Shown here: one piece after another, positions 22,160 through 64,000 of the stretch
Layout of the letters: every line of letters begins with the position of its first letter
Position numbering within the stretch: the first letter of the stretch is position 1
Origin: Styela clava
Taxonomy: Eukaryota
Length of the DNA: 64,000 bases
Reading direction: 5' to 3'
Assembly: GCF_964204865.1 (NCBI RefSeq)
Contig: NC_135261.1
Span: 7,502,001-7,566,000 of the forward strand
Position numbers and translations under genes: made by a program
Notes under the pieces: model-generated
Databases searched by the model: none
What the model saw: only the letters and a program-made list of their open reading frames with translations
Told to the model about the DNA's origin: nothing

Positions 22160-24931
22160 TTACAATAAACCATGACACATTCCATCAATGTATTCCAATC
22201 TCATGCACATGTGACCATACCATGTTTGAGGATAAACTCGAATGTATCGGCATATTATTACATTCGGAAACATGTTGGTGACCTTGGTTCTTCTATCATT
22301 ATTTCCAGTAAATATCTAAAATATATAATAAGGATCAAAAGTATCACAATAAGTTCAGTAGATCATATCAAAATATAGTAAATATAAGTGATAGTTGGAT
22401 TACAGTTGAGTATATATTAATCTAAATTAGGGGATTGCAACATTTTCTGTCGTTGGGCCCTATAACCAACTTCAGACATCTAGCTGGGCTACACAAAAAA
22501 TAGTTTTTTCATGTAAATACCGAATAAAAAAATTCTTGTTCAGCCTTACAGCTATAAAGGCAACAGGCAAACGGCCGAAGATTTAACGCAGCGACAAGAA
22601 TCATGTGAGCGCTTTTTTAAACATAAATGTCGGATTAGGATTTTATTCTTGATGAAAAAAATCTTGAGTGTTGACAAAGGCTCTGATATAAGTAAGAAAT
22701 AGCCACTATGAAGTGTAGAACTCCCCGCTTGTCAACAAATTTCTCTGATAAGAGTTTTTCATGCATTTTGCTGTCTCCTTGCCAAGTTAACTGGTATCTA
22801 ATTTAATTAATGAGTATAGTTTTATAATAAGTCACTATTTCTTTTATATATATATGTTTTTTATTTGAATTCCATATGAAAGACCCCAAATTCGCTGCTG
22901 ACTAGCTTGTTAACAATGACTAGAAAATCCCATATTATGATAAAACTGTTGAAAATCATTATTATTTGCAAATCGAGCTTGATTACTAAATACATCCTAA
23001 ATGCAGTTTTATAAAGGCAAAAAGAGTTTCGAGATACTATCTTACCTTGTCTGAACCATTCTCTTGTATTGTTATCATTGCGCTGGTAGAATTTCCATAC
23101 GATATTTTGAAAGACCGAACCCAATTATCGTTGCGTGCTCGTCCCTGTGTCACGATTCCTCCTATTGGTTTTGGCGCCTTGAAATATACCTGATGCCATT
23201 CTCCTATTGCACCTATAAAAATGAATCATTTATTTTAATATTCTACGAAGAGATCATCCCACTTACATTTTTTAATGCACACAGTCTAAATTCTATAATT
23301 TTGCAACAGGCAGAAGAACTTACTAGAAATCAAAGTTAAATCAAATAGTAACCACATTGCACTATAAGTGCAGAAAGATTTACCAGAAATAACTACTATA
23401 CGATTCATTGCATTCTGTGTTATATGATAGATATTTTTGACCGTGATAATGAACTCTTTCAATTTCATAATTGAGTGCGAAATAATTTAAAGTTTGTTTT
23501 GAAGTTTTATTGAGAACTTATGTACTTGTCAAATATGATATAATTTAACAAACATTCAAATAAATTTGTATAAATAAAAAATTTGGATAAAGACATAGTT
23601 TCCGCAAACGCGAAAATAGTATATTTTGAAGCGCAAACTGTCAGTGATTTTCCATGATTATTTATTTTAATTGTAGAAAATCAAAATAACTTACTTCTAC
23701 CAGGAATCCAAACAGCGTACTTTCCGCCAGAACGATCCACATTGTCCAATCTTCCATAATAAGCTTGATAACTGGGACCATCAAATGATGAAGCTGTGAT
23801 TTGTGAGTCAGGAATGATATAACGATTCTTGACACCCATGTAGCAAATCTCAGCTGAAATTAGAAGTGACCACGCTGTGTATGGTAGGCAATTTCATATC
23901 TTGATTGTTTTTAGTTGGGAGCATTGTAGGGAGACAGAACTTCGGAAACAAATGTGGGAACATGCGATTGAAACCATAATTATTTTATAAGTTTTTGATA
24001 ATATTTTTTCGTCGAGGTTAGATATATTAACAGACTATCGTATTTATTATGAGCAACCATAATTAATTCAGTGACATGAAGTAAAGTCTCTCAACCTTAT
24101 AATAAAAGTTGCCATTGTCATATGATTGCCGCTCAAAACGACTCAGTTTGCCTATTTCTCTAAAATGCTTTATTTATGCAATATTTATATTTATTTATTC
24201 ATGCAATATTTATGTCTGATATAAAAACAGTTATTGGCACAGAGTGTGCCGTACACAGATATTACTCTTGTTTAATTTCAATGATTTTGACATTAATCTG
24301 TTTTATTTTCAAGCAAATGATTGAAGCCGGAAAAGGTGGAAATATACAAATGCAATTCAAATCAAGATCTTCGGCATATGTTTGACAGCAGTGAAATGCT
24401 TACAATTTAGCATATTCTTCATGAACTTTTGACTCTTCAGGAATGAATCTGAAATGAATAAATTAGATGATTAACAAATTGTTAAAATATTTTGAAATTT
24501 AGAGTTTTAATAACAGTTCTGTCTTGAACAATACAAGAGTCGTGTTCAGTTTGAGGTGAATTTCTTTGCACGTTAAATCAAAAAATATTATATTGAGAAT
24601 AAATGATTTGTAATAAATTGAAATTTATCAATCTAATGGAAAAATCTTTCCGATATGATTCGTTCAAACAATCACCTTCCAATTTCCTCATTCTTTCTTC
24701 TAGGTGTTCCGCTGTTCCTGGTTCACCCCGTTCTCCTTTTATTCCGGGTAATCCACGTATTCCTTCATTTCCTCTTTTTCCTGGCCTTCCCTGGCACTGA
24801 CTCGAGTCACATCTGGCGAGACTCGCATTGCCGTTTGCCACCACGTGTGAACAAAATTCATACAATGTTGGCATGTGACATAAGACACAAGGAAGCAGCA
24901 ATATAGAACAGCAAACAACAAAAGAATTCAT
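22160..24931 (-). CDS. Secreted collagen + FA58C/discoidin-domain protein, copy 1 (260 aa)
   Basis: Exons 24931-24676 (signal peptide, 3 Cys, 9 Gly-X-Y), 24448-24404 (neck), 23853-23695 (ICYMG...IPDSQITASS...GRLD...W), 23212-23046 (EWHQV...GIVTQGR...WVRSFKISY), 22315-22160 (IFTGNNDR...CRYIRVYPQTW...MRLEY..GMC). 783 nt, in frame, all GT-AG. Confidence 0.92.
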
Positions 24932-27094
24932 ATTGTTATATCTAAATGCAGGAAGGAGAATATGAAAAGCTTTACAAAATATGTACAAATTTCAATAACA
25001 TAAATTGTCTCAAAAAGGTTAATTAATTTCCTGTACACTTCAACAACAAAATAGAATATACCTCCGTTCGATATCTGCATCGTGGGCATAATATTTGCTG
25101 GAAATTTTTCCAAAAACGTAGCAAATTCATAATTTAATCCCATCCCCTAATATATTCAAACAAGTCTCCCATAATATCGTTTTGTACTCTAATAATTTTA
25201 CCTTCTTCCTCAATTTACTAAGAATATTGTGGACTTTCTACACTGAGTGATGTCTTAAACCTCTTCTCAGCATACACGAATTTACAGACTAAATCTATTT
25301 CTGTCTTCTTCAATAAATAAAGTCTTAAATCTGATTTTCTGAGTGGAAATAGTCTGTGACGTACATAAGTTAAGTTTGCTTTTACCAAATTTGCAGATTG
25401 AAAGCGCCTTGTGTTGTTTAAACTTCTCAGCAGGGGTGAAATAACAAAAGATATCAATGGAGTCACTTGAGACAAGTGTTTCAGTTGAAGTTTGGGTCAT
25501 CTTCTCACGACCTTTAATATTTATATGTAAATCTTCCAATCAAATTGCGTGCGAAAGAAAACTAGTAGAAAAATTCCGTCGGTGGTAAATATTTTACCGT
25601 GAATCAACGAGACTATAAATCAATCCGTAAATTTCTGTTGCAAATTCATTCAATAAAAGGCAAATTAAATTATATGCAAATTAAATTCCGTTTAAATCAT
25701 TAACTTTCTATCATATTGATAATGTTATCAATTATTTCTTCTAATCTAAAATCCCTGTTTTCACATTTGAAAACCTAGATTTCCACCCAATCGAAATATA
25801 CTTATCGGTTACTTACTTACGAAAATTGATACAAATAAAGAATTAAACAAAAAACTGATGACGTCCCATCGTACCTTTCTCGTATTTGGTTTTGTAATGT
25901 CGCTTCAAATTATATTCTTTCGTGACGGATATTACTTGAAAACACACCAGACACTGTGGTTTAACGTTGTTGTGGGTAAGGAAACACATTGCTTTCCAGT
26001 TCACTTCGGTCACCTTTGTCAATAAACAACCAAGTCCGTCTGAGTTGAGTCTCCTGACTCAGCTAAAAAAAAACGAACTGCGTGGCTCTAACTAACTTTT
26101 ATTAGAAAAGTAGTACTAGTAAAGCACCTCACGAATACAGCAATGAATTCGATTACTGAAACTTAATCATTTGTTATTTTAATCACCATTTGTGTTTATA
26201 AATATTCATATACAGATATTTAAAGAAAGTTCGGTATAGTAATTATATATGGTAAATCATAACTGTCATCATTTAAAACCATATTAGAGATAACAACTTA
26301 TCTAAGATTGGTATATGTCTTATCAAATAGGATTATGCAACTGTGTTTACAAGCTGTTAACAACTATATATGATAATTTAAAACCAATCCACGCATGATT
26401 ACACGATGAAACGAAGTTACGTTCTTGGAAACGTGAATAACACTATCAAGAAGACGTTTCATTCATATCCGGAGCAAAAGTTTAAAAAGTACCAAGGTGA
26501 CTTCATATAGTGTTGAATGTGATGAACATTTATCGCATGATGCTCCTATGAACACACGCGCTTATTTATTTCAATTGGAAATAAACGCATTTGACTTCTT
26601 ATCTTCAGCAATGACGTATTTAAGCTCAGTCAATCTTTAGACTTATGTTATAGTGATAAAAGCGTAGGTATGGTTGTGTCAGTCATTGGAAATGCAGAAT
26701 AAAATCACGGGCTAGGCTTAATTTACTTGCCAACCTTTTTCCGGAGCAATCGTTTGAATACATCTTATAAATGTCAAAAATATATTACATTTTACGGCTT
26801 AATCAAAGTCTATGCATCTGGGACAAATCTTCTTCGAGCAAGAGAAGTGCCAAATCTTCCTTCATCTCTTTAATAGTAACACACTATATAATCTGAGTTT
26901 ATTGGATGAAAGTCTTTTTTCATATTACCTCATGATTGAAGTTAGGTTTTACGAAGTGAGAGGTGGCGAACTCGTGGTTTAAGATAGTGTAGCGTACCGG
27001 CAATGTATGAAATAATTATCCAGGTTCAGAATATCTTCTAATATGATCTGACCTCTAGTTTCCTCTCAATAGTCCAAGTCTTTACGCTATATTA

Positions 27095-34100: not shown

Positions 34101-34319
34101 ACAAAATTAGAAATTTTCCATTGCTTGACATGCCTTCTAGTTAAATTGTGGATAAATTGGAACAAAACAAAAAGCTGAAGAATTGAGATCAACGAACGCC
34201 AGTCGCTATAACACCAACACACAGCAGTCTGTCATTAACTGTTAACCTAACCCGGTGTAAAATTATTAGTATTGTAATTATGGGAATCTCGGGATATTGA
34301 CAAGTTGATTCCATGTCAG
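31130..34319 (+). repeat. Shuffled 3'-flank segmental repeats of the collagen-discoidin array
   Basis: Blocks recur at ~21370-22140, ~38200-40050 and ~62680-63940. Confidence 0.85.
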
Positions 34320-37141
34320 TTACAATAAACCATGACACATTTCATCAATGTATTCCACTCTCATGCTCATGTAATTATGCCATGTTTGAGGATAAACTCG
34401 AATGTATCGACATATTATTACATGCGGAAACATGTTGGTGACCTTGGTGTTTCTGTCATTATTTCCAGTGAATACCTGAAATATATAATAAAGATCAAAA
34501 ATATCACAATAACCTCAGTAGGAACTAACAAAATATAGTAAATAGTGAATATAAGTGATAGTTCGATTACAGTTGAGTATATATTAAACTAACACAGGGG
34601 TTTGCAACATTTTTGTCGTTGGGCCATATAACCAACTTCAGACATCTAGCTGGGCTACACAAAATATAGTTTTTTCATGTAAATAACGAATTAAAAAATT
34701 CTTGTTCAGCCTTACAGTTATAAAGACAACAGGCAAACGGCCGAAGATTCACGCAGCGACAAGGGCCATGTGAGCGCTTTTTTAAACATAAACTGTCGGA
34801 TTAGGATTTTATGCTTGATGAAAAAAATCTTGAGTGTTGACAAGGGCCACACTAAATCGCGTTCCTGGTTGTGGCCCGCAGCCCGCCTGTTGCACATCCC
34901 TGATCTAAATATTAAATAGCCACTATGTAGTGTAGAATTCCCCGCCTGTCAACAAATTTCTCTGATAAGAGTTTTTCATGCATTTTGCTGTCTTCTTGCC
35001 AAGTTAACTGGTATCTAATTTAATTAATGAGTATAATTTTATAATAAGTCACTATTTCTTTTCTATAGATGTTTTTTATTTGAATTTTATATGAAAAACA
35101 GCAATTTCTCTGCTGGAAAGCTCGTTAACAATGACTAGAAAATTCCATATTATGATAAAACTGTTAAAATCATTTTCATTTGCAAATCTAGCTTGATTAC
35201 TAAATACATCCTAAATGCTGTTTTATTAAGGCAAAAACAGTTTCAAGATACTATCTTACCTTGTCTGAACCATTCTCTTGTATTGTTATCATTGCGCTGG
35301 TAGAATTCCCGTACGATATTTTGAAAGACCGAACCCATTGATCGTAGTCTGGTCGTCCCTGTGTCACGATTCCTTCTATTTGTTTTGGCGCCTTGAAATC
35401 TACCTGATGCCATTCTCCTATCGCATCTATGAAAATGAATCATTTATTTTAATATTCTACGAAGAGGTCATCCCCACTCACATTTTCCAATGCACCCAGT
35501 CTAAATTCTATAATTTTGCAACAGGCAGAAGAACTAACTAGAAATCAAAGTTAAATCAAATAGCAACCACATTGCACCACATATAAGTATACGTTTGATT
35601 GCATTCTGTGTTATATGATAGATATTTTTTACCGTGATTATGAACTCTTTCGAGTTCATAATTAGTTGTGAATTAATTTAAAGTTTTTTTTGAAGTTTTA
35701 TTGAGAATTTATGTACTTGTCAAATATGATATAATTTAACAAACATTCAAATAAATTTGTATAAGTTAAGAATTTGGATAAAGACATAGTTTCCACAAAC
35801 GCGAGAAAAAAGTATATTTTGCAGCGCTAATTGTCAGTGATTTTCAATGATCATTTATGATAATTGTAGAAAATCAAAATAACTTACTTCTAACAGAAGC
35901 CCATACAGCCCACTTTCCCCCAGAACGATCCACATTGTCCAATCTCCCATAATAAGCTTGATAACTGGAACTAGAAATTGATGAAGCTGTGATTTGTGAG
36001 TCAGGAATGATATGACGATTCTTTACACCCATGTAGCAAATCTCAGCTGAAATTAGAAGTGACCACGCTGTGTATGGTAGATAATTTCATTTCTTGATTG
36101 TTTTTAGTTGGAAGCATTGTAGGGAGGAAGAACTTATGTGCGGAAACAAATGTGGGAACATGCGATTGAAACCATAATTATTGTAAATGTTTTTGATTAT
36201 ATTTTTTCGGCGAGGTTAGATATAATAACAGACTATCGTATTTATTATGAGCAACCATAATTAATTCAGTGACATAAAGTAAAGTCTCTTAACCTTATAA
36301 TAAAAGTTGCCATTGTCATATATGATTGCCGCTCAAAACGACTCAGTTTGCCTATTTCTCTAAAATGCTTCATTTATGCAATATTTATAAATATTTATTT
36401 ATGCAATATTTATGTCTGATATAAAAACAGTTATTGGCACAGAGTGTGCCGTACACAGATATTACTCTTGTTTAATTTCAATGATTTTGACATTAATCTG
36501 TTTTATTTTCAAGCAAATAATTGAAGTTGGAAAAGTTGGAAATATACAAATGTAATTAAAATTAAGAACTTCGGCATATGTTTGACAGCAGTAAAATGCT
36601 TACGATTTAGCATCTTCTTCATGAACTTTTGACCCTTCAGGAATGAATCTTAAATGAATAAAGTAGATGAATAACAAATTGTTAAAATATTTTGAAATTT
36701 AGAGTTTTAATAACAGTTCTGTCTCGTAAAATTCAAAATTCGAGTTCAGATCGAGTTATAATTCTTCGCACACTAAATTAAAAAATAACATATTGAAAAT
36801 AAATGATTCGTAATAAATTGAAATTAATTGAAAATTATTTATCTGATGGAAAAATCTTTCCGATATGATTCATTCAAACAATCACCTTCCAACTTATTTA
36901 TTCTTTCTTCTAAGTGTTCCGCTGTTCCGGGTTCACCCCGTTCTCCTTTTATTCCCGGTAATCCACGTATTCCTCCATTTCCTCTTTTTCCTGGCCTTCC
37001 TTGGCACTGACTCGAGTCACATCTGGCGAGACTCGCATTGCCGTTTGCCACCACGTGTGAACAAAAGTCATACAATGTTGGCATATGACAAAGAACACAG
37101 GGAATCAGCAATACAAAACAACAAACAACAAGTAATTTCAT
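34320..37141 (-). CDS. Secreted collagen + FA58C/discoidin-domain protein, copy 2 (260 aa)
   Basis: Exons 37141-36886, 36648-36604, 36046-35888, 35426-35260, 34475-34320; same exon sizes as copy 1 (256/45/159/167/156), open frame. Confidence 0.92.
34595..34902. mobile_element. hAT MITE in intron 4 of collagen-discoidin copy 2
   Basis: caggggtttgcaaca ... tgttgcacatccctg followed by atctaaat; partial paralogous copies at ~22428-22680 and ~40290-40550. Confidence 0.75.
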
Positions 37142-37269
37142 GATTGTAATACCGTTAACCTATTAATGCAGGAAGAAGAATATGAAAAGCTTTCCAAAAT
37201 AGGTACAAATTTCAATAACATAAATTGTCTCAAAAAGGGTAATTAATTTTTTGTACACTCCAACAGCAA

Positions 37270-40052: not shown

Positions 40053-42414
40053 TTACAATAAACCATGACACATTCCATCAATGTATTCCACTCTCATTAT
40101 CATGTGATTATTCCATGTCTGAGGATAAACTCGAATGTATCGACATATTATTACATGCGGAAACATGTTGGTGACCTTGGTGGTTCTGTCGTTATTTCCA
40201 TTAAATACCTGAAATATAAATAGGGATCAAAAGTACAACAATAAGTTCAGTAAACCATATCAGAGTATAGTAAATACATTGTAATTGTCGTTGGGCCATA
40301 TAACCGACTTCAGACATCTAGCTGTGCTACACAGCAAATTAAAAAATTCTTCCTCAGCCTTACAGTTATAAAGGCAGCAGGCAAAACAGAAGAAGATTTT
40401 ACGTAGCGAAAGAGCCATGCGAGCGCATTTTTATACATAAACTGTCGGATTAGATTTTTATGCTTGATTGAAGAAAATCTAAGTGTTGGCAGCGGCCACA
40501 CTGAAGAGCGGGCCTGGTTGTGGCCGACGGACGCCTGTTGCACACACCTGATCTAAATCATAAATCGCCAATATAAAAAAAATGTAGAATTCCACGCTTG
40601 ATAACGAATTTCTCCGATGTGAAATTTTCATTCGTTTCGCTTTCTCTTTGCCATCTTAACTGGTGTCTACTTCAATAAGAGTATTTATTAAGTATAATAG
40701 TATAAAAGATTAAATTTTAGATGAAAGACCGCAACCTTGATTGAAGCAACCTTGATGACCCGGAAATCCCATATTGTGATAAGAGTGTTGAAAATCATTT
40801 TATAATAGCAAAATGGGTTTAGAAATACTACCTTACCTTGTTTATTAAGTATAATAGTATAAAAGATTAAATTTTAGATGAAAGACCGCAACCTTGATTG
40901 AAGCAACCTTGATGACCCGGAAATCCCATATTGTGATAAGAGTGTTGAAAATCATTTTATAATAGCAAAATGGGTTTAGAAATACCACCTTACCTTGTCT
41001 GAACCATTCTCTCGTATTGTGATCATTTCGCTGGTCGAATTTCCATACGATATTTTGAAAGACCGAACCCAATTATTGGCATCTGGGCTTCCCTGTGTCA
41101 CGACTCCTCCTATTGGTTTGAGCGTCTTGAAATCTACCTGATGCCATTCTCCTATTGTATCTATAAATATCAAATATTTTATTATTCTACGAAGAGGTCA
41201 TCCCCACTCACATTTTTTAATGCAGTCAGTCTAAATTCTAGTATTTTGCAACAGGCAGAAAAACTAACAGAAATCAAAGTTGAATCAAATACTACCACAT
41301 TGTACTATAAGTGCAGAAACGATTTACGAGGAATAACTACTATACGTTTTATTGCATTCTGTGTAATATGATAGTCTTACTCTTGGCAATGATAATGAAC
41401 TCTTCCGAGTTCATAATTGGGTGTGAAATAATTCAGAGCTTGTTTTAAAGCTTTTAAAAAATAACTTCATAATAACTCAAATATGCCATAATTTACCAAA
41501 CATTTACAAAAATTAGTATAAGTTGAGAATTCGGATAAAGACACAGTGTTCACAAACGTGAAAAGAGCATACTTTTCAGCAAAGAATGTCAGTGATTTTT
41601 AATGATTATTCTTATATTAATTATAGAAAATCAAAATAACTTACCTCTTCTAGATAACCATACAGCATACTTTCCCCCAGAACGATCCACATTGTCCAAT
41701 CTCCCATAATAAGCTTGATATTGGTTATTGTAAATTGATGAAGCTGTGATTTGTGAGTCAGGAATGATATGGCGATTCTTTACACCCATGTAGCAAATCT
41801 CAGCTGAAATTTATATCAGAATTATAAGCTGGTATATATGTTTTATAATGTGACATTTCATTTCTTGATTGTTTCATTTGTATTAGCAGGAAACACTGAA
41901 GTATTCCGAGGAACATTACTTAAACCGGGAATATGAAAATACAATTCCACGTAATGATTCTGCATATGTTAACAGTAGCAGAATACTTACGATTTTTGAT
42001 TGCCAAAAGCTGCTTTTGAGTCATCAGGAAAGAATCTTGAAAGAAAAAAAAAGGATGTTGAAATATTTAGGAATATGTACTATGTATAACATGTATTAAT
42101 TGAAAGGTAATTAACCGATTACAATACATGCTCAGACTTATTTGGTTCAACTCATCACCTTCCAACTTCTTTATCCTTTCTTCTAGATGTTCCGCCGTTC
42201 CAGGTTCGCCCTGTTCTCCTTTTATTCCGGGTAGTCCACGTATTCCTTCATTTCCTCTTTTTCCTGGCCTTCCCTGGCACTGACTCGAGTCACATCTGGC
42301 GAGACTCGAATTGCCGTTTGCCACCACGTGTGAACAAAATTCATACAACGCTGGCATGTGACATAGCACACAGGGAAAGAGCAAAATCAAGGTAACAGCA
42401 ACGGAAAATTTCAT
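40053..42414 (-). CDS. Secreted collagen + FA58C/discoidin-domain protein, copy 3 (260 aa)
   Basis: Exons 42414-42159, 42035-41991, 41803-41645, 41160-40994, 40208-40053; same exon sizes, open frame. Confidence 0.92.
40684..40999. repeat. 157-bp near-perfect tandem duplication including the exon-4 donor of copy 3
   Basis: tttattaagtataatag...ccttaccttg occurs at 40684 and again at 40841. Confidence 0.95.
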
Positions 42415-45800: not shown

Positions 45801-48712
45801 ACAAGTTATTCAAACAATACTAGGGTGCTTAAAAACATTGGTCAATTTCTGATAACCATACCGATTCGTATTTGATCCCACAATGACTGGTATTGAATAT
45901 ATAAAATGTTTAATATATATGAGACTGTTAATATTTATCTGTTTGTTAATTTTTGTAAACATTAATGCAACTTCTGCCTCTTCGTTGGCTGAGTCCCTCA
46001 TTTTTGGAAATTTGTAATAACAACTTTTCTTTGTGAATTGTATGAGCTTATTCTGGAAAATTGTAGTCTCATTTTGGAAGTGACAATAAAATTTGGGCTA
46101 AAATACGGCACACTCTAATCTCAAGAACATGGGGCAATAACTGTTAAAATTGAATTAGAATGTCATGTTTAAAATAAATTTGAGAATCCGAGGTCTTTCA
46201 TGGCACGTGATTCCCCACTACAATCAACAAACCAATGCCAAGTGCGTGCGTTACTTAATAACACTTATAAAGATGGGTTAACTGTAATTATGAATATTTT
46301 TAGAATTCACAATGCAAAGTCACGATTAGGTGGGTAGGTGGTACTGGGCCATAGAATATTGTTGTGTTAAAATTATTTTTTACCTTTTTTTTGGCACGAC
46401 GTTTTAGTTATTTAGCATTAGGCTATTGAATAAATTATAAAACAAAGTTTATTCATTTTCAAAACACTTGTCGTTAAAATGAAGTATTTAATGCTTTTTA
46501 TTCATGCATTATAGAGGTCCTCAGTTGAAGGCAAATTTTTTTGCGCTTGCGCTTATCCGAAGTCTCATTCACGTAACTGTTTCTTGACTTGACTAATCAT
46601 GAATGGCTCATTGTCAACTGCTTTCTACTCAACATCCATGCAGCAAAGATAAATCTTAACACAGCCCATACAACGCCAGTAATCTCTCTCAAATGCTCAA
46701 TCAGGTGACTTGATTTTTTATTATTAAGATAAGATACCTAGCAGCTGACATAGAAATAATGTCAATAATTTACAATATAAATATATGCATGGCTTATCAA
46801 TCATGATTTAATGATGAAACCATGGTGACTCTTCCAGCGATATTCACGTTTGATATCAGATTACCGTAAGTTGGCTTATAAACCCTGATACTTACATTTT
46901 GTCGAGAGAATAATAAAAAAACAACCTAATATATGGCGGATAAATGACGACATAGTTAATCGTTTAAATCATACAATTTCGCTTTTAGTGTACGTACGAA
47001 CTCGTCTACACTAGACGCCATGGAACCTGACTACTCACTACAATCACTTTTTTGACTTAGCTGCAATTTATCGGATTCGTATCAACACAAAAAGAAGTTA
47101 TTGTCTGTTTCGTAAGACAAATAGGGTTGTTGAAAGAATCGTAAATTTCTATGAATTAATTTGAGACAGGGCAAAATTGAGTCTCAGTCAAGCTTGCGTT
47201 TGCCAGTATTTCCTTTCACATGTATTTAATGTGTGCTGGCCTTGCTTTTTCCATGCAGAATTATAAAACGACAAACTTGACCCAATGCTGTAAGAACGTA
47301 GATGATATATATCGGCGATAAACGTTGCTACAAAATAAATACACAACACAAGATCGGTCATGCAAAAACCATCCATCATAATAATGAATACAAAATGAAA
47401 TCATGCAGAATTGAAATATTTGTTCATCTGACAAATAAATCATGAATTAGCAAAAGCTAGCGATACCTTTTTCAAAGATAATAACATGTAAAAGCTGATT
47501 TTGTATTGTTAGATGACGTATGAACAAAGTTATCAATTTCCAAGATACTAGGTAAGTATTTATTCCTCGGGAAAATAATATGATTGATTGAAGACAAGAA
47601 AATGCCAATGAGACATCGTGCATAGACGTTTCGACTGTTTTCAATAAATATTTTTTCAATCAGCAAGGTCACGCGTGAATTAATTATAACTCGAAAATAC
47701 TCGTTCGTGAACAAGTTCATGGAATTGCAAATTCTTAAAAGTAGCTTAAAAGGAAAATAACAAGCAATTGATTTATAGAAAATAGTACTTAAACGCATTC
47801 TGAACGAATGTATGAAATGTTCTCAAACCAATACCAATTTAATTACCAACAAGTTTTTCAAACAATACTAGGGTGCTTAAAAACATTGGCCAACATTTGA
47901 TAATCATACCGATTCGTAATTGATCCCACAATGACTGGTATGGAATATATAAAATGTTTAATATATATGAGTCTGTTAATATTAATCTGTTGTTAATTTT
48001 TGTAAAAATTAATGCAACTTCTGCCTCTTCGTTGGCTGGGTCCCTCATTTTTAGAAATTTGTAATAACAACTTTTCTTTGTGAATTGTATGAGCTTATTC
48101 AGGAAAATTATAGTCTTATTTTGAAAGTGACAATAAAATTTGGGCTAAAATACGGCACACTCTAATCTCAAGAAAATGGAGCAATAACTGTTAAAATTGA
48201 ATTAGAATGTCATGTTTAAAATAAATTTGAGAATCCGAGTTTTAGTAATTTAGCATTAGGCTATTGAATAAATTATAAAACAAAGTTGATTCATTTTCAA
48301 AACACTTATCGTTAAAATGAAGTATCTGATGCTTCTTATTCGTGCATTATAGAGGGCCTCAGTTGATGACAAAATGTTTTTGCGCTTCCGCTTATTGGAA
48401 GTCTGATCCGCGTAGCTGTTTCTTGCAGCAGGGATAAGTCTTAACACAGCCCATACAACGCCAGTAATCGCTCTCAAATACTCAATCAGGTGACTTGATT
48501 TTTATTATTAGGTTAGGAAACCTAGCAGCTGACATAGGAATAATGACAATACTTTATAATATGAATATATGCATGCCTTATCAATCATGATTTAATGATT
48601 AAACCATGGTGACTCTTCCATCGATATTCACGTTTGAAATCAGATTACCGTAAATTGGCTTATGAACCCTGATACTTACATTTTGTCGAAAAACAAAATA
48701 TAAAAGAAACAA
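42829..48712. repeat. Tandem triplication, unit ~2.05 kb
   Basis: Units start atatatggcggataaatga near 42829, 44879 and 46929; equivalent ORFs are offset by 2049 and 2048 bp; the third unit carries deletions. Confidence 0.95.
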
Positions 48713-49148
48713 CCATTTCAAGCAATACTTGATATTGTTTTAAAAGAAGCAATGATATACGTAAGATTAGACTATTTCGTTTGATATTTATTTTGAGCAA
48801 GTTTATGTGAATAAAATTTATACCTTCATCTACTAAACTTGTATGTAGTTTAATAAATAAGCAGAACAAAAATGTTAACTCCATTTTTTAGATATTTCTA
48901 GACTACCCTAAATATTGACGAGGTATTTGTTTTTTCATAAAACTCTTATCTGTCAATCATGTGGATAAATTTAGATAATCAACATTGTTCGACAACCACT
49001 CATAGGTATCGACATATTATTAAATGCGAAAACATGTTAGTGACCTTCGTGTTTGTGTCAATATTTCCTGTAAATATCTTAAATTAAGAAATGATTCAAA
49101 ATATTAAAGTTAGATCAATATTTAATTACATACGGGTATATTTTTTTT

Positions 49149-49156
<8 letters not shown>

Positions 49157-49181
<25 letters not shown>
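49157..49181. repeat. (TA)n microsatellite
   Basis: About 12 TA units. Confidence 0.9.
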
Positions 49182-49773
49182 CAACTGTGGAATGTGGGAA
49201 CACTCACTTGTCAACGAAGTTTTCATAATAAAAATTTTCTGAGAAGTTTATTGAGAAATCTGCAGAATTCGCTATCAATAACTTCATATATTTTAAATAC
49301 ATGTTAACATGCATCTACTTAAATATCTGAACAGAAAATGGAAATGATATGTATGTTCTTTGGCGTTAGGGGTCGCTGTAGAGTTGTGACTGTTCTAGAG
49401 GTATCTTTTCAATTTCGGACAAAGGCTTTGAAATATCAGAAATATATTATCAATTTATAACAATGGGGCCCAAATATACTAAATTCACGCTTGTGTTCTT
49501 GTTGGATTAAAAGCGGGTAAATTATATTTGATTAATTCAAAAATAAGTTTTGATACTACAGTACCTTGTCTGAACCATTATCACGTGTTGTTATCATTGT
49601 TTAAAAACTTGTCTTACTTGTGTCACGATTCCTCATTTTGGTTTAGATGTCTTGGAATCTATTTCATGTCATTCTCCTACTTTATCTATCAAAATTCTTT
49701 ATTCATTTCAAAGAGTTTTCAATTTTATACTCCGACTAACATTTAAGAAGCTCCTGCACTGTATACTATAGAT

Positions 49774-50069
49774 CAGGAGTGGGTAAAGTTTTTTGAACCA
49801 GGGGCCAAAATGTTGCCCACCTAGCCCGGCGGGCCATGTAAGTGTGACGTAAAGAGTTACATTTCATAAACAATATTCACAGTATTACAAAGCAAAGCTG
49901 GAAAACAATAAACCTCGTGCCAAAACTAAATTTAACCGCAATCTCAACAAATACCTTGAGCTATTTTTAGCCAATTGGTTTCAGTTTGGCAGTGGCAGCA
50001 TCAGGCGGACCAGATTGAAATATCCAACGGGCCGGATTTGGCCCGTGGGCCGTACTTTGACTATGTCTA
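49774..50069. mobile_element. hAT MITE in copy-4 intron 3
   Basis: Perfect 8-bp TSD ctatagat; degenerate TIRs; ggccggatttggcccgtgggcc subterminal motif. Confidence 0.7.
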
Positions 50070-51128
50070 CTATAGATGAACGTTCTTTCGTAACATGCAG
50101 ATGAATTAGAAAGATTGAATCAAGGACCATAATGCATCAAAAGTTTAGTAGCTTCAAACACATCTGACCATTAATATCGCCAAATCCCGACACATTTCGA
50201 GTACACGTTTCAAACATTTCTTTGTATTTTGGCTGAAGTCAGCTAAATTGGACTTCTCTAACAAGTAACAAACAATTGAAATAGTTTCCAAATACTAACT
50301 TCTGTAATTGTAAATTTGAATGAATTCTAAAGTTATTCAAATATACAACTCCAAATTTAGAGGATTTGTATTGAAACCGGATGTTTCCATATCTATTTTG
50401 AATATATTCCTTTTTTTGGCCATCATCCCTGTTGCAAATTAAATTTAAATATAATCTCAGCACGTCAGCAAATGCTCGTCCTAGAATGCAGATAACAGAT
50501 CTGGAGCGATAAAGTTTATTACAAAACGAAAAATGCAACACGCAGCTGGAATAGAATCATTATTGAGCTAAAAAACCATTCAATACAATAATAATTACAA
50601 TGAACAATCATATACCATATACCAAGCCTGTTGAGTTATAGGGAATAGAAATAAAGATGCTACAACTTGTACCAGTTGGTTCCCCAGCTTTTTATTCCAA
50701 ATTTGGAGGGTGGTAGATATTTTGTTATTGGCGATAAAACTATTTACAACTGATAAAAATGTGTTATGTATTTGGCTGATAATTTTTACCGGCATATGTG
50801 CCACTTTTTGAATATTCAAATACAATTTTATTTACGTTAAGAATTAAAGTATTGTGTCAGACCCAAAAATGAGAGGGGGTGTTTGAAAGTTTAGGGGGTG
50901 TTCACCCCCTATAGGAGGGGAGGGGTTGAAGGGAAATCACTGACTTGTACAACGATATTTATGTTTGAAAGAAGATTATAACAGCAAATACACATTATCA
51001 CAATTTAAGCACGTGTATATCGTAACAATTCAATTATACCGGTATCTTAACGTACGTACCGGTATGAGGATTGCGTACGACAGTCTTTTAGGTATCACGT
51101 ATCAGCCCTATATTAAGGAAGCTTGAAG

Positions 51129-52100
51129 ATGTCACAAAAACGAAAACTAGACACTGAAAACAGGCGTTTTTCGGATAAATGGCAACGTTCTTATTTCTTT
51201 ATTGAAAAGAATCAAACTTCAGCAATTTATATTCTTTGCCAACAAGCTATTCTTGTTCTATTCCTGTTATAAACTACGGTCCAGACTGACAGATAATCAC
51301 TTAGAGTGCGGTATTGCAAATACAATGTAACAAATTGGAGCCACGTTTTGAACATCAGTTTTCAAGCAAACCCCAATTACAAGTATCTACAAAAATGCAA
51401 GTGAACTATGTTGGCTATTCGTTTTTTTTTAATATTCATATACATTGAGACGTTTTTTTGTTTAACAAAAAAAAAACATGAGTCGCTATCTGGGGTCATC
51501 TCTTATCTCTGGGGTCAATCTCAACCTCTGTGTCAGTGGATAATATTGGTAGTACAACTGCAAAAACCATACTCACCAGAGATAACAGTGTTTTATAAAC
51601 TTCAACTACAAATTTAATTAGATAACAAACCTTGGGTGTCGCTGCCTGATAAACAGTTCCCAGCGATTTCCCTTCCCAGTAAAATGTGTGTCAATTTTAC
51701 TTTTTTCATAATTTCGTTTGTTATTTTTACTGGATGGAAAAAATAAACTTGACCATGATATGAGTAGACATTTATACAAAGCCGTACTCCAGATGAGCAA
51801 GTAACTTCATTAGTCGCTATCAGTTACAAATCCTTTTTGAAAGTCGTGCTTGTTATTCCTCGGGTATTCTATCACCCAACTATTATACTTTTGAATTTTA
51901 TTACAAACAAACTGCGATACTGGGTGTATCTAAAATGAATCTTGCAGCCTATTTTGGTGCCTATTTTTCAAAAATTTTTCAGGGAACGCCCTGAACCCCA
52001 GCCTTTACGTCGGGTTTTTTTGGTCATCTCGCTTTACTGGCCCGCGAGTATCCTCACCTTGAAATTTTGGCCCGCGGCCAAATAAGTTTGGGAACCCCTG
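51129..52100 (+). mobile_element. Decayed hAT (SPIN/GTF2IRD2-like) transposon remnant
   Basis: MSQKRKLDTENRRFSDKWQRSYFFIEK...ILCQQAI resembles the N-terminal zinc-finger region of this transposase group; right TIR gtttgggaacccctg followed by atctagat. Confidence 0.6.
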
Positions 52101-55100
52101 ATCTAGATTGTGACGCATCGTGTCGTCTGACTTTTTTCCAGTGCTTCTGTTTGGCTTCAATATACGCCAGCATAGCCGCCAAATCCTATATTTTGAACTT
52201 TTTTTTCATAGGATTTTGTATGTGGACGGCCGCATTTTTTTCGCGACGGCCACATGCGGCCGTACGCCGCAGGTTGTGCACCGTTGCTCTAGATCTTAAA
52301 AATGTATATTGTTATTCAAGTTACTATCATATTTTGGTTTCCCTTAATATTACCCTTAACTTGTTGTGAAGATTCTAAAAATAACATCTGTACTTTAAAT
52401 GTGTACTGTATCTGTACATCTGTAAATTTTAAGATGTTCAAATAAAATTGCATAATTGAGAAATTGGAAAAACATCTTCACATTTGTAAAATTTTCATGC
52501 AAACAAATATCGGTCAATTGGAACGATTATTGAATAATAATTATGTAAAATCAAAATCACTTACTTATCTGTGTAGCCCAGTATGGATACCTTCCCCGAT
52601 CTAGATTGTCCAATCGTCCATAATAAGCATGATGATTGTTATAGAAAACTGATGAGGCTGTGATTTGTGAGTCAGCAATGATGTGACGATTCTTTACACC
52701 CATGTAGCAAATCTCGGCTGGAATTTATATCAGAATTATGAGGAAATAGTAAATATTGTATATTATGACGTTTCATTTCATGATTGTCTCATTTGTATTA
52801 GCTGGGAACAATGAGCACTGTAGGTGTTTCGAGTTAATTAAACCGGGAATATGAAAATACAATTCAACGTAATAACATATATCAACAGTGGTAGAATACT
52901 TACGATTTGTCATCGCCATGAGTCTTTTATTCATCAAGAAAGAATCTTGAAAGAAAAAAAAACAAGAACGTTGAAATATTCAAAAATATGTACTATGTAT
53001 AACATGTATCAATTGAACCGTAATTAACCAATTACATTACATTTTCGGAATTATTCGTTTCAAATCATCACCTTCCAACTTCTTTATTCTTTCTTCTAGA
53101 TGTTCTGGTGTTCCAGGTTCTCCTCTTACCCCGGGTAATCCACGTTCTCCTTTATTTCCTTTTTTTCCTGGCCTTCTTTGGCACTGACTCGAGTCACATC
53201 TGGCGAGACTCGCGTTGACGTTTGCCACCACGTGTGAAAAAAAATCATACAATGTCGGCATATGACATAAGTCACATAACACACAGGGAAAAAGCAAAAT
53301 CAAGGTGACCACAACGATAAATTTCATATTAGATTTTCGGATAATATTTCCTAAAATATATTAGCAGAATTGGATTAAAATGGTACAAATGGTAAGTTCT
53401 TCAAAAAATTATATAAATTTATCATTTTACACTTTGAAGCTAAGAAGAGATTTTGAAAGCATAATTTGCTTTACATATGAAGCATGCGTTTCAGATAAAT
53501 CAGCTCTATTATTTCATTGGTGTTGGCGTAATTAGCTAGCGTAATATTCCCAATTAAATGTAGGGGTGAGTGAAGTTGACTATGTTGCTAACCTACATAT
53601 ATGTTAATTTTATGTTTTCCAATTTTCAGGTTTGGTGATATATTGTTATCTTCAAAACATTCACCCAAAGTATGTTTTGAAGGAATATAATATGATTAAT
53701 AGCGTTTAGAACTAGGTAACTCTTTCTTAGTTATTACGTGTAAACTTTTCTGTAAAATATCTAAATATTTAACAAAAAAATTACGGTAGAATTATTGAAA
53801 CCAATAAATTAGAATAGTGGTATTTGTAGAAAATAAACATCGCTATGTATAAGGGGTAAATATTTTTAGAGGATTAGGCGAGGAAATTTAAAGAAGCCTC
53901 TACCACACGCTCACATCATAAATTATAACTGTAAACATTAGAAATCATCACTAAATCAGGGCGGAATAACCTGTGCGGTGGTGTGTTTCGGTTGCACTAT
54001 ATAGCAAAATTCAAAAATATTCTAGACGTAATTAGTAATTAATTACCTATAATTAGATAATTGCTTGGCGTGCTTCTCTGTGTTAATACATATATAATAT
54101 GACACCTCCATTTCATCTATCAGTGATTCCAAAAGTGGGCAACATATCTCTCTGGAGGTCAAAGGGAGATACATTATGGGGCAAAAAACGACAGGCGATA
54201 GCACATTCAATTTTCGCTTATAGGTTGTACCTATAACCAAATTGTCTCCTAATATTAAGAAAACTTCTTGACAATCAACAAGCTGCCCACCCCATTAGAG
54301 GAGAAGACACCATAAACACATTAGAACACTTGTTTAATTGATTTGTAATGATCTTGTTTTTAATTTACTTTAATTTTTGAATTGCCGGGTGCCATAATAA
54401 CGTATAAAGTGCTGTAAATGCGCAATGGTACATAAATACAAGAGAATAATAAGCGAATTTATGTTTGAGATAAAAACAATTCCTTACCATCTTAGGCACA
54501 AGTATATGAGATATAGAAATCCAATTTTCTAGCGAAAAACGACCCAGAAAAATACTTTGATTTCAGTCGCATCGTACAGCTTATACCAAAACGTACAGGG
54601 TTAGAGTGTGGAAAAAGTTTCTGCATCCCTGCTCTGAATAATGACAATTTCTGCTAATGTACAACTCACGCTTCATTGATTTGCTCGGCGCCAAGGAGAC
54701 TTGAGGCCGAGCTGGCTGAGGTACGAAGAACCTCAGTGAAAAGCACCCTATCTGCAAAACTAACAACCGAAGAACTATTACTCTCAAATTGTATCAGCGG
54801 AATTGAAATAAAAATATACAAATGGTGAGTTTTTCAAAATTTCATATGAATTGATCCTTTTACGACATAGAGCTGAGTAGGGTTTTTAAAGTCATAATTT
54901 GCTTCACATATGAAACATGAGTTCCAGTTTAATCAGCTCTATTTAGTTTAGTAGTAGTATTTTAGAAGATACGTATTTACTATAGTACTTGTAATACTTT
55001 ACTTATACTTGTTTTTGCAGATGTTATTATGTCGTATGAAAATCTACCCTTTTTATACCTTACCGTCTGAAAATTAGACATCTGAATCAAAAGCATGACG

Positions 55101-61391: not shown

Positions 61392-61704
61392 CGTGGTTCT
61401 CAAACTTTTTAAATCACGACTCCTTTTAAGAATTTGTCAAGTCTTGCGAACATCTCAAAAATAACTCGCTAACAATAATCTACAAAGAACAGATATTAAG
61501 GCGAAAGTATATTTTATTCGAAAAACACGTCGGAAATACTTGGATGAAAAATAAATATCCAAAATAAAGAAATTTAAAGATTCAAAATAAGATCAAATCT
61601 AAGAAATATTTTTTAATTTCAATTAGCCTGGCGCCCCCTCGAAAATTTTGCTACGCCCTCAGCACCCCCAATTTGGATGGCACCCAACCGTGAAAGAACC
61701 ACTG
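61392..61704. mobile_element. hAT-type MITE
   Basis: gtggttctcaaac ... gaaagaaccactg; internal sequence related to ~12580-12780 and ~62600-62680. Confidence 0.6.
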
Positions 61705-63939
61705 ATTTAGCAGATGATATTGTATACTTTTAAATAACAGTGAACAAATTGATTCATTTTAATCGCGCTGAAGTCCTATTTTTTCGGTTTTTCAACCTGC
61801 ATCTCTTTCTTCAATTTTGCCCCAAATATGACCCATGATTAACTAGATATTATGCCCCTAATAATCCGAAATTTCTAAACTTTAAATGATAGGGAAAATT
61901 CTCAAAAACATTGCCTGATACAATCTTTCAACGTTTCTTCCAGTTTACCGCCATTCTTGGTTTTCCATTACTTATAATGGTAAAATATTATGTTCAAAAT
62001 TAAAAGCATTATCAGAGTAACAGTGTTTCGTGATTGATCGAAATGATCTAGTTATTGGTCATGAAATGGGATCCTTTTTCCAATTGTTGTTTATTCAAAT
62101 CTTCTTCTTGTTGTTGCTGTTTTTTGTTGTACGGGAACAATTGGCCTTTCTATCGATTTTCGAATTACCTGTTCTGTGAACACGGTTGCACCAAAATGTT
62201 GCTGTTTCGTTAATTCAATGGTGATTATGGGAACACTGGGATTAAGGGGGGACACTACGCATTAATATCTCTTTGTTTGATGACATTTTGACTTGAATAT
62301 AATAAGTGTAATATATATACAATTGAGTATGAAATGAAATGGGGTTCAGTGATATGTGACCTGTCATTATTCAAAATTTAGTGAGTGCAACCGGGTGTAA
62401 ATCTTCTCTTCTTTCACGTCATTTCGTCAAATAAAACTCAAGCAAACGCTTCTAAAATGCCATGAGTAAGGTTTTAGAGCCTATTATTTGACAAAAAAAA
62501 CGTTCTTTTTTAAAATTGACCATTGGATAACAGTTTGAATAGAGGGAATCCTGTTGCCCTGATTCAAATATATTTCTTGGAAACGTCTTTCTTTGGAACA
62601 GTGGTTCTCAAACTTTTTAAACCTCGTCTCATTTTAGAATTTGCCTTGCGCCTCACCTGAAATATAACTAGCTAACTAACACCGAGTTATAAATGAATAA
62701 CATTTTGAATGTCTGGGCTCCTAGGCTCCAGCCTACCTGGCCTAATGGTAAAAATCCGATACTGCTATAAGCCCAATGTCAAAACGCAAAACAGTTATAT
62801 TTTCTTACCGTTGCCACAGTGCCGCGTTCCCTAGCGGTCGTTATCTGATGAATTATTTCTATTCCCGTAGTGTGTGTACCACTTCGGGGCTACGCCATAA
62901 TTTTATTCCGATTTTCCTTATTTTATTCACAAGTTCGGGGACTGTCTGTGGTGGCCCAGTGAACATACCCCCCCATAGGCTTCCGTCCCTTTACACAACG
63001 ACAACTTGATGTGAAGTAGGCGAACAAAATTAATTACCTCCATATTGGTACACACTTCTGGAACGCCGCATTGTCAACTGCACGCCTAATGACAAAACAT
63101 ATAACAGGTTTATTGTCGATGTGCGCTACCTCGAACAACAGTTGACTACTGCCTTGATCTAATCTGATCGGCGAAATAAAATATTCTGTAATTATTCCAC
63201 CAGATGGGGAATAGGTTTTTTTACAGGAAGGTATGACCGATAAATGCCGTCAGCGACGTTATCATGAATTTGCGAGTTAAGCAGCCATTTGAGACATTGT
63301 TTAATCAAAAGTGTGTGATATATATTTTGTGATGTAGTAATACAATTAGCATTTGACAATTGTCGCTAACTTAATTTCGTACGCTTTTTTAGCAAAAAGA
63401 CCTGGCCCCAGTCCCAATGTTGTAGAACTTACAGATACATAGCATATTGTATTGCAAAACAACAAAGATATCTAGTAGCTGACATAGAATGACAAATGAG
63501 AAAAAATTCATCGAACACTAAAAACATTGATATGGCAATAATGTAGAATAGGTATATTATATACACGGTAAAAAACTGAATGAATGCCAGAAGTGTATTT
63601 AACGGAGAGCCATGCTCAAATAGATTAACACGAAGATCAACGCGAAGCAGAACAGTCCCACAATTGGGGAAAATGGATTGTTTTAACTTCGCGCTCTATG
63701 AATATTGAGAGTTGGAAAATAAAATCAAAAAATTTAATATTGCGTGGCGTGCATTCAAACTAAATCGTGGATAAAATGGAACAAAGAAAAAAACTGAAGA
63801 ATAGAAATCAACGAAAGACATGCGTTTTAACATCACCGTATAACAGATTGGTATTTGCTGTTAAATCTAACCCGGTGTAAAATTATTAGTATTGTAATTA
63901 TAGGAATCTCGGGATATTGACAAGTTGATTCCATGTCAG

Positions 63940-64000
63940 TTACAATAAACCATGACACATTCCATCAATGTATTCCAATCTCATGCTCATGTAGCTTTTC
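63940..64000 (-). CDS. Collagen + discoidin family copy 5, 3' end of last exon (gene continues beyond window)
   Basis: Reads KSYMSMRLEYIDGMCHGLL-stop and has the same 3' flank as copies 1-3. Confidence 0.85.
   Translation of the reverse strand, partial: KSYMSMRLEYIDGMCHGLL

What the first reader, a model, noticed from the sequence alone, without database searches (positions are those of the whole stretch)
22160..64000. Tandem family of collectin/ficolin-style defence collagens with a discoidin (FA58C) head
Seen: at least five copies encoding signal peptide, three N-terminal Cys (FC...RCDSSQC), 9 Gly-X-Y triplets, a short helical neck (EHLEERIKKLEDSFL...) and a single FA58C domain. Established: this is the layout of MBL/collectins (CTLD head), ficolins (FReD head) and C1q (gC1q head), and discoidin domains bind glycans, phospholipids or collagen. 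Inference: a further class of oligomeric pattern-recognition collagen with a discoidin head. Automated annotation would probably label it lactadherin- or retinoschisin-like and miss the architecture. I cannot confirm that it is undescribed.
Basis: partly seen in the sequence, partly recalled or inferred. Interest (0 to 1): 0.85.

Follow-up and report, generated by a model that had tools for sequence, protein, structure and literature searches.

The report
Collagen-stalked discoidin proteins, sea squirt
The window holds a tandem array of expressed sea-squirt (Styela clava) genes for small secreted proteins that carry a discoidin (F5/8 type C) head on a short collagen stalk and coiled-coil neck, the build of collectins and ficolins with a different head. 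Databases call them "lactadherin-like", and their function is untested.

Summary
On the minus strand there are three intact 5-exon genes of 260 aa, one pseudogene, and the tail of a fifth gene cut by the window end.

- **Build:** signal peptide, three mature N-terminal Cys, 9 Gly-X-Y triplets, a 28-residue heptad neck and one F5/8 type C domain.
- **Expression:** spliced contigs in RNA-like runs confirm all four introns of gene B.
- **Annotation:** the organism is Styela clava.
- **Family size and range:** at least 46 loci on 11 chromosome-scale contigs. Orthologues of the same build occur in Ciona and Clavelina, and none was found outside tunicates.
- **Trimer:** a three-copy fold passed its controls (0.43 against 0.01), with contacts along the stalk and the neck heptad core.
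- **Variation:** differences between paralogues concentrate in four head loops that align with the neuropilin b1 ligand pocket (dN/dS 1.0 against 0.22).
- **Stalk motif:** a Pro-Gly-Lys-Arg-Gly motif is nearly invariant and matches the MASP-docking motif by sequence only.

The most likely reading is a multivalent soluble recognition or agglutinating protein. An immune role and complement docking are untested.

The scan had already noted this family on other DNA of this genome (s1-817517, s1-815983). A 2019 paper on an agglutinating S. clava "lactadherin" could not be read.

The parts
22160..24931 (-). Gene A, intact, 260 aa. Exons 24931-24676, 24448-24404, 23853-23695, 23212-23046, 22315-22160 (stop included).
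   Evidence: GT-AG model. Identical to RefSeq protein P0157, 'lactadherin-like [Styela clava]'. Pfam F5_F8_type_C 75.5 bits.
34320..37141 (-). Gene B, intact, 260 aa. Exons 37141-36886, 36648-36604, 36046-35888, 35426-35260, 34475-34320.
   Evidence: All four introns appear as joints in RNA-like runs X1, X4 or X6 and not in the DNA-like run X10. Identical to P0155. Pfam F5_F8_type_C 88.8 bits.
40053..42414 (-). Gene C, intact, 260 aa. Exons 42414-42159, 42035-41991, 41803-41645, 41160-40994, 40208-40053.
   Evidence: Identical to P0183.
48940..53327 (-). Pseudogene D. Exon 1 (53327-53072) is open but has lost the first Gly of the stalk and Cys27. The micro-exon (52945-52904, 42 nt) and exon 3 (about 52717-52563) are open. 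The exon 4 remnant (49695-49562) has stops and a frameshift, and the exon 5 remnant (49071-48940) has stops.
63940..64000 (-). 3' end of gene E (last 17 codons and stop). The rest of the gene lies beyond the window end, with exon 1 at G000:C16:7570852-7571094.
   Evidence: locus L015 follows the window directly.
36998..37086 (-). Mature N-terminal Cys-rich segment of gene B (HMPTLYDFC...RCDSSQCQG). It is the most constrained part of the protein.
   Evidence: dN/dS 0.11. Cys27, Cys46, Gln47 and Gly48 are invariant and Cys41 is at least 90% conserved in 13 proteins.
36920..37000 (-). Collagen stalk of gene B, 9 Gly-X-Y triplets, with Pro-Gly-Lys-Arg-Gly at triplets 1-2.
   Evidence: In the trimer fold, residues 47-74 are in contact in all three chains.
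36604..36648 (-). 45-nt phase 1-1 micro-exon of gene B, encoding the second half of the neck (SFLKGQKFMKKMLN).
   Evidence: Joints 36046|36604 and 36648|36886 with CT..AC ends in RNA-like runs. Homologous exons occur in A, C and D.

Best explanation
These are secreted Styela clava proteins of about 27 kDa before glycosylation. Three chains are held together by a 9-triplet collagen helix and a three-and-a-half-heptad coiled-coil neck, and so present three discoidin (F5/8 type C) heads. The three N-terminal cysteines probably link chains, and possibly link trimers into larger bouquets. The heads bind a ligand through four loops at one end of the barrel, and these loops differ between paralogues. 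The family would therefore work as a repertoire of multivalent soluble recognition or agglutinating molecules, functionally like collectins and ficolins but with a different head. Shown here: gene structure, expression, domain content, family size, the pattern of conservation and variation, and a controlled trimer prediction. Inferred: secretion, disulfide oligomers, the kind of ligand, and any role in defence.
For: Five-exon models are confirmed by spliced contigs in RNA-like runs and are absent from a DNA-like run. They are identical to RefSeq proteins. FA58C scores 75-89 bits, with flanking Cys104 and Cys256 invariant. A fold of three copies of residues 47-260 scored 0.43 against a best control of 0.01. 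The runs agreed in at least 92% of contacts and pLDDT was at least 84. The mark was reached by 21 of 30 solved homo-pairs and by 0 of 23 proteins solved as single chains. Contacts lie at 47-74 and at neck positions 77, 81, 84, 88, 94 and 98, i.e. Leu, Ile, Leu, Phe, Phe, Met. At least 46 loci pair this exon 1 with FA58C exons, and all the family loci sampled from every cluster show the same build. Among 7 close paralogues, variation falls in residues 125-129, 147-154, 178-183 and 242-246, with pooled dN/dS 1.00 against 0.22 for the rest of the head. In the youngest pair, A against B, the loops show 20 nonsynonymous and 1 synonymous differences, against 13 and 9 elsewhere in the head. These patches align with the neuropilin-1 b1 loops that carry its pocket residues (alignment; pocket residues from my own knowledge). 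The same build is kept in Ciona and Clavelina.
Against: There are no binding, localisation, challenge or tissue data, because run metadata are coded. The stalk is short, and Pfam Collagen is below its cut-off. The trimer pass may come from the model's memory of collectin-like structures, and the test was calibrated on two copies, not three. The AF2 monomer model was poor (pLDDT 59). The loop patches were chosen after seeing the variation, so their high dN is partly circular. A ratio near 1 also fits relaxed constraint. Discoidin domains also bind collagen, phospholipid and peptides, so 'lectin' is not established.
Confidence: 0.6

Rival explanations
1. The proteins are lectin-pathway recognition subunits. 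The conserved Lys in the Xaa position of stalk triplet 2 docks the CUB domains of ascidian MASPs, so ligand binding by the discoidin heads triggers C3 activation.
For: Lys sits at Xaa of triplet 2 in 31 of 34 distinct stalks. Pro precedes it in 32 and follows the next Gly in 16. X/Y entropy is 0.4-1.0 bit at triplets 1-2 and mostly 2.1-3.2 bits at later positions. Ciona keeps GRPGKRGPPG. [quoted passage not shown] MBLs, ficolins and MASPs are described in ascidians (PMC5465252).
Against: The match is by sequence only. The Yaa residue is Arg, which was not among the tested residues. The site lies one triplet from the Cys knot, where access may be hindered. The stalk is much shorter than that of MBL. 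Clavelina has Arg in place of the Lys. Conservation could instead reflect helix nucleation next to the knot. I did not identify a MASP gene in S. clava: the CUB search gave too many hits to resolve.
Confidence: 0.2
2. The proteins are matrix or tunic components. The discoidin head binds collagen, cellulose-associated glycans or other matrix, as DDR discoidin domains bind collagen, and the trimer cross-links matrix. The role is not immune.
For: The discoidin fold binds collagen in DDRs (established knowledge). The proteins are collagenous and secreted. Ascidians build a large extracellular tunic. One relative carries an extra ILEI domain (P0143).
Against: A structural role does not predict at least 46 paralogues with changes focused in the pocket loops. 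The stalk of 27 residues is far too short for fibrils. The neighbouring gene is a fibrinogen-related (ficolin-type head) gene, which hints at a lectin-rich neighbourhood, though this is weak evidence.
Confidence: 0.15
3. The proteins are phosphatidylserine-binding bridging molecules like true lactadherin (MFG-E8). They would mark apoptotic cells or membranes for uptake.
For: The head is 35-38% identical to mammalian lactadherin C domains. The PDB match to lactadherin C2 has E = 5e-27.
Against: There are no EGF domains, no RGD and no second C domain. The loops that insert hydrophobic side chains into membranes in lactadherin and factor V/VIII (my knowledge) are mostly polar here, for example SSSSY, DGPSY and RPDYDQ. 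The variability of the loops argues against a single invariant lipid ligand.
Confidence: 0.05

Closest known systems
Collectins (MBL, SP-A, SP-D, CL-K1)
   Same: Signal peptide, N-terminal Cys-rich segment, collagen stalk, alpha-helical coiled-coil neck and a C-terminal globular recognition head on a trimer. A Lys in the Xaa position lies within a Pro-Gly-Lys-X-Gly context.
   Different: The head is an F5/8 type C (discoidin) domain, not a C-type lectin domain. The stalk has only 9 triplets and no kink. The Lys lies at triplet 2, next to the Cys knot.
Ficolins and C1q / C1q-like proteins
   Same: A collagen stalk carries a trimeric globular head. They are soluble 'defence collagens', and both occur in ascidians (PMC5465252).
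   Different: The head is neither fibrinogen-related nor gC1q. Unlike ficolins and C1q, this family has a coiled-coil neck.
Lactadherin / MFG-E8, the name given by RefSeq
   Same: A secreted protein with an FA58C domain of 35-38% identity.
   Different: No EGF repeats and no tandem C1-C2 pair. A collagen stalk and neck take their place, and the loops are polar and variable.
Retinoschisin
   Same: A small secreted protein with a single discoidin domain that works as a disulfide-linked oligomer (PDB match E = 3e-19).
   Different: Retinoschisin oligomerises through its RS1 domain into octameric rings. It has no collagen and no coiled coil.
Other collagen-plus-head chimeras of invertebrates (cnidarian nematogalectin and CniFL, colmedins)
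   Same: The same modular logic: a short collagen trimeriser fused to a binding domain (my knowledge, not tested here).
   Different: The heads differ (SUEL lectin, Ig plus FReD, olfactomedin). They are not homologous to this family apart from the Gly-X-Y repeats.
Microbial collagen-like proteins with FA58C domains (P0073, from metagenome contigs)
   Same: Collagen repeats and F5/8 type C domains occur in one chain.
   Different: 1109 aa with five FA58C domains and long collagen runs, from small metagenomic contigs. It has no Cys-rich end or neck and is not the same architecture.

Membership tests
F5/8 type C (discoidin) domain, PF00754 | Profile match above the curated cut-off over the whole domain | tested here: met
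   P0155 (gene B) 88.8 bits and P0157 (gene A) 75.5 bits against 28.2, covering profile positions 1-126. Exons 4 and 5 pass the cut-off alone.
F5/8 type C (discoidin) domain, PF00754 | Cysteines flanking the domain, which form the N-to-C disulfide in solved members | tested here: met
   Cys104 and Cys256 are invariant in 13 family proteins. The disulfide itself was not tested.
Collagen triple helix | Uninterrupted Gly-X-Y repeats able to form a trimer | tested here: met
   There are 9 triplets in A, B and C and 7-13 across the family. All three chains are in contact along residues 47-74 in the controlled fold.
Collagen triple helix | Pfam PF01391 above its gathering score | tested here: not met
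   17-23 bits against 27.2, because the stalk is short. This is why annotation misses it.
Collectins | C-type lectin domain as the head | tested here: not met
   No PF00059 hit. The head is PF00754.
Collectins | Cys-rich N-terminus, collagen and alpha-helical coiled-coil neck | tested here: met
   Cys27/41/46, 9 triplets and helix 74-98. Heptad positions are in contact in the trimer fold.
Ficolins | Fibrinogen-related domain as the head | tested here: not met
   There is no PF00147 in these proteins. A separate FReD gene lies at 8226-9786.
Lactadherin / MFG-E8 | N-terminal EGF domain(s) followed by two tandem discoidin domains | tested here: not met
   A single FA58C domain and no EGF. Mammalian lactadherins match only 55% of the query, i.e. 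the head.
Lectin-pathway recognition molecules (MASP-binding collagens) | [quoted passage not shown] | tested here: inconclusive
   Pro-Gly-Lys-Arg-Gly is present. Lys occurs in 31 of 34 stalks and the following Pro in 16 of 34. The window copies have Asn there. Hydroxylation and binding were not tested.
Lectin-pathway recognition molecules (MASP-binding collagens) | Physical association with a MASP and activation of C3/C4 | not testable with these tools
   This needs protein biochemistry.

The most novel reading that the evidence does not exclude
Tunicates possess a further class of complement lectin-pathway recognition molecule. It would be a discoidin-headed defence collagen that docks MASP through the conserved stalk lysine. 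It is ancestral to ascidians (Ciona, Clavelina, Styela) and has expanded in Styela clava to about 46 loci whose pocket loops diversify, giving a germline repertoire of specificities.
Probability: 0.2. Interest if true: 0.8.

Novelty: new variant of a known kind. Interest (0 to 1): 0.55.

Why it matters
Collectins, ficolins and C1q show that a collagen stalk bearing a trimeric binding head is the recurring design for soluble innate recognition in chordates. A discoidin-headed version would add a head type to that design. It is conserved across the three ascidian orders and expanded in one species, with change focused in the ligand pocket. That would give a tractable system for asking how new recognition molecules plug into, or stay outside, the complement lectin pathway in the closest relatives of vertebrates. 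It also shows a systematic annotation gap. Short stalks fall below the Pfam Collagen cut-off, so such proteins are named after the head alone ("lactadherin-like", "retinoschisin-like", "carboxypeptidase-like protein X2").

Tried and rejected
- **First gene model.** My first 4-exon, 245-aa model was wrong. Joints in RNA-like runs revealed a 45-nt exon.
- **Representative search.** The search with an exon-4 profile was flooded by multi-domain FA58C proteins. Only single-stretch hits of 215-300 aa were useful.
- **Monomer fold.** The AF2 model from 13 sequences was poor (pLDDT 59), so no fold search was run. The fold rests on Pfam and on PDB sequence matches.
- **MASP gene.** An attempt to find a MASP locus by scanning the genome for CUB domains gave 125 matches and was abandoned. 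MASP presence in S. clava is not shown here.
- **Type II membrane isoform.** This was suggested by the old RefSeq model P0082. I rejected it for this assembly because its N-terminal exons match 11685-13345 at 85-94% identity and lie downstream of gene A on the same strand. It looks like a chimeric prediction.
- **Exon shuffling of the stalk onto other heads.** Rejected, because every exon-1 hit that I could pair is followed by FA58C exons.
- **Literature.** Eight full-text searches found no description of the architecture. Guo, Dou & Dong 2019 (PMID 31140104) and Green et al. 2006 (PMID 16716625, collagenous lectin of Styela plicata) are not held. No supplements are held for PMC10980280.
- **Atlas.** The search returned only the family's own cluster.
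Full report
**What is in the window**

The window is AT-rich (about 33% G+C). A six-frame scan found four Gly-X-Y runs, all on the minus strand. Exon peptides of the first copy matched five places.

My first models had four exons and 245 aa. Contigs of three RNA-like runs from three studies were then laid on 34250-37250. They cover the predicted exons and a repeat-rich stretch of the last intron (also very deep in the DNA-like run), and little else. They carry joints at 34475|35260, 35426|35888, 36046|36604 and 36648|36886. Apart from small offsets in run X6, all have CT..AC ends, which is GT..AG on the minus strand. The DNA-like run X10 covers the introns and shows none of these joints.

The last two joints define a 45-nt exon that I had missed. 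Homologous exons with AG/GT borders exist in the other copies. The corrected genes have five exons, intron phases 1, 1, 1 and 0, and encode 260 aa.

- **Genes A, B and C** are intact.
- **Copy D** keeps open 5' exons, but it has lost the first stalk glycine and Cys27. Its exon 4 and 5 remnants carry stops and a frameshift.
- **Copy E** has only its last 17 codons in the window. Its other exons lie in the next 5 kb of the chromosome.

**How the spliced model was handled**

The joined sequence was never sent to a search tool. Exons were joined only inside local scripts, for translation and substitution counts.

The exon-4 profile search returned database proteins. From one of these, a word-index search returned RefSeq records that are letter-for-letter my models: P0157 is A, P0155 is B and P0183 is C. 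All later whole-protein steps used those records.

**Organism and annotation**

The records are from Styela clava. They sit on contigs of exactly the lengths of this genome's C13, C16 and others.

They are named "lactadherin-like". Relatives are named "retinoschisin-like", "inactive carboxypeptidase-like protein X2" or "discoidin, CUB and LCCL domain-containing protein 2-like". The stored Pfam lists for nearly all of them hold only discoidin-type families, with no Collagen.

**Domain content**

- **Head:** on the full proteins PF00754 scores 75-89 bits over profile positions 1-126. The domain is bracketed by invariant Cys104 and Cys256. The best solved relatives by sequence are neuropilin-1 b1/b2 (5e-29), lactadherin C2 (5e-27), factor VIII and V C domains, and retinoschisin (3e-19).
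- **Stalk:** PF01391 reaches only 17-23 bits against a cut-off of 27.2, because the stalk has 9 triplets.
- **N-terminus:** the signal peptide probably ends at Cys18 (inference from the -3/-1 pattern and from paralogues that have Gly or Ser there). The mature end HMPTLYEFC...C....CQG then has three cysteines. An odd number suggests at least one interchain bond.

**Trimer**

Three copies of residues 47-260 of P0155 were folded with controls. The score was 0.43 and the best control 0.01. Runs agreed in at least 92% of contacts and pLDDT was at least 84. The mark was reached by 21 of 30 proteins solved as homo-pairs and by 0 of 23 solved as single chains.

Confident contacts run along the whole stalk (47-74). 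They also fall at Leu77, Ile81, Leu84, Phe88, Phe94 and Met98, a 3-4 heptad core.

The tool warns that the calibration used two copies, and that a pass may reflect memory of similar solved assemblies. I take the result as support, not proof.

**Family**

Exon 1 of gene A finds 68 matches in the 377-Mb genome. For 45 of them, PF00754 exon matches lie 1-6 kb downstream on the same strand. One more was confirmed in a fetched locus (L006), giving at least 46 loci. They sit in clusters on C16, C13, C2, C4, C3, C1 and C18, with single loci on C10, C14, C17 and C6.

Twenty fetched regions were examined, taken from every cluster plus three regions with FA58C matches only. All the family loci among them show exon 1 followed by three FA58C exons, at identities down to about 37%. 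I found no case of this stalk joined to another head.

A tree separates 19 S. clava proteins from the Ciona and Clavelina proteins (100/100). It places A, B and C in a six-member clade of chromosome-16-type genes (99/97).

A and B are a recent duplicate with a 12.2-kb unit, and their intronic stretches are 91-95% identical.

**Relatives elsewhere**

A profile of 13 full proteins found two ascidian relatives:

- **Ciona intestinalis** XP_026696052.1: 254 aa, GRPGKRGPPG..., a Cys-x-Cys after the stalk, a heptad neck and FA58C.
- **Clavelina lepadiformis** CAK8680029.1: 253 aa, 8 triplets, with GRRG where the others have GKRG.

S. clava keeps a gene of that Cys-x-Cys type 245 kb away (L002). Hits from cnidarians, amphioxus, a hemichordate and vertebrates match the head only.

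The build is therefore shared by three ascidian species (of all three orders, by my own knowledge of their taxonomy). Within the limits of a word-indexed, length-filtered search, it was not seen outside tunicates.

**Pattern of change**

Among seven chromosome-16-type paralogues, dN/dS by region is:

| Region | dN/dS |
|---|---|
| Cys-rich end | 0.11 |
| Stalk | 0.30 |
| Neck | 0.46 |
| Head | 0.42 |

Within the head, sites with three or more residue types cluster at 125-129, 147-154, 178-183 and 242-246. Pooled dN/dS there is 1.00, against 0.22 for the other 130 head codons. In the youngest pair, A against B, the patches hold 20 nonsynonymous and 1 synonymous differences, against 13 and 9 elsewhere in the head.

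In the alignment to neuropilin-1 b1, the patches fall on the loops that carry Tyr297/Trp301, Thr316/Asp320 and Ser346-Tyr353, and just after Trp411. From my own knowledge, these residues form the neuropilin ligand pocket, and the corresponding loops are the "spikes" of factor V/VIII and lactadherin C2.

The patches were defined after I had seen the variation, and a ratio near 1 also fits relaxed constraint. I therefore claim focused change at the binding end, not proven positive selection. The loops here are mostly polar. That fits a glycan or protein ligand better than membrane insertion, but this is an inference.

**The lysine motif**

In 34 distinct stalks:

- Pro at the Yaa position of triplet 1 occurs in 32.
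- Lys at the Xaa position of triplet 2 occurs in 31.
- Arg follows the Lys in 28.
- Pro follows the next Gly in 16.

Entropy is 0.4-1.0 bit at these positions. Most later X and Y positions have 2.1-3.2 bits; the exception is the Yaa of triplet 6 (1.07 bits, Lys in 28 of 34).

[quoted passage not shown] Only the Lys is essential, and three substitutions sufficed to give SP-A MASP binding (PMC2856262). Ascidians have MBL-like lectins, ficolins and MASPs (PMC5465252).

The sequence test is therefore met, with these cautions:

- The Yaa residue is Arg.
- The site is one triplet from the Cys knot.
- Clavelina has Arg in place of the Lys.
- No binding was tested.
- I did not find the S. clava MASP gene.

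I re-derived the motif counts independently but could not add functional evidence.

**Literature**

Eight full-text searches found no paper describing a collagen-stalked discoidin protein in tunicates or other animals.

[quoted passage not shown] The paper is not held, so I cannot tell whether its protein belongs to this family. If it does, agglutination is already published.

Collagenous lectins purified from Styela plicata (Nair 2000, Green 2006; listed in PMC5465252) could not be read either. Their heads are unknown to me.

**Verdict**

The architecture reading is supported, and the immune reading is plausible but untested.

The thing is real, expressed and already predicted in RefSeq under misleading names. 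This scan had already noted it on other DNA of the same genome (s1-815983, s1-817517).

It is best filed as a new variant of the defence-collagen design. It is not a collectin, a ficolin or a true lactadherin.

Noticed in passing
window 8226-9786 (-), with upstream exons at about 11685-13345 (-): A fibrinogen-related (ficolin-type head) gene lies next to the array: PF00147 scores 108.9 bits on 8226-8603 and 26.4 bits on 9541-9786. Its upstream exons encode a cytoplasmic tail and a hydrophobic span, i.e. a type II membrane FReD protein.
   Followed up: partly
window 42951-48100: A tandem repeat of three units of about 2.05 kb, 95-97% alike, lies between gene C and pseudogene D. Its ORFs have no Pfam match.
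   Followed up: partly
P0082 (XP_039252601.1); window 11685-13345 and 22160-24739: An older RefSeq model joins type II membrane N-terminal exons to gene A from GERGEPG onward. In this assembly those exons lie downstream of gene A and match at only 85-94%, so the model looks chimeric.
   Followed up: yes
L019 (G000:C18:18149000-18154000); P0143: One family member carries an extra C-terminal ILEI (FAM3-like) domain after the discoidin head (PF15711, 56.5 bits). Its build is therefore collagen, FA58C, ILEI.
   Followed up: no
P0149 / P0181 on G000:C16: These are type II membrane proteins with a closely related FA58C head but no collagen, named 'adipocyte enhancer-binding protein 1-like'. They could be membrane-bound counterparts of the soluble family.
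   Followed up: no
L002 (G000:C16:7808000-7814000): Two FA58C genes lie 245 kb from the window. One has a stalk followed by Cys-Lys-Cys-Asp and a neck, as in the Ciona and Clavelina proteins. It is probably the ancestral type of the family.
   Followed up: partly
G000:C14:14860000-14880000 (L018 holds the first 10 kb): Several whole FA58C domains sit in long open frames of 359-712 aa without introns, unlike the exon-split family genes.
   Followed up: no
G000:C2:17569900-17607500: The family genes on C2 recur with a period of about 12.26 kb and identical match scores. This is a very recent tandem amplification of a two-gene unit.
   Followed up: no
P0073 (metagenome contigs): A 1109-aa protein from small metagenomic contigs combines long collagen runs with five FA58C domains. 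It is an unrelated, probably microbial, case of the same two domains in one chain.
   Followed up: partly
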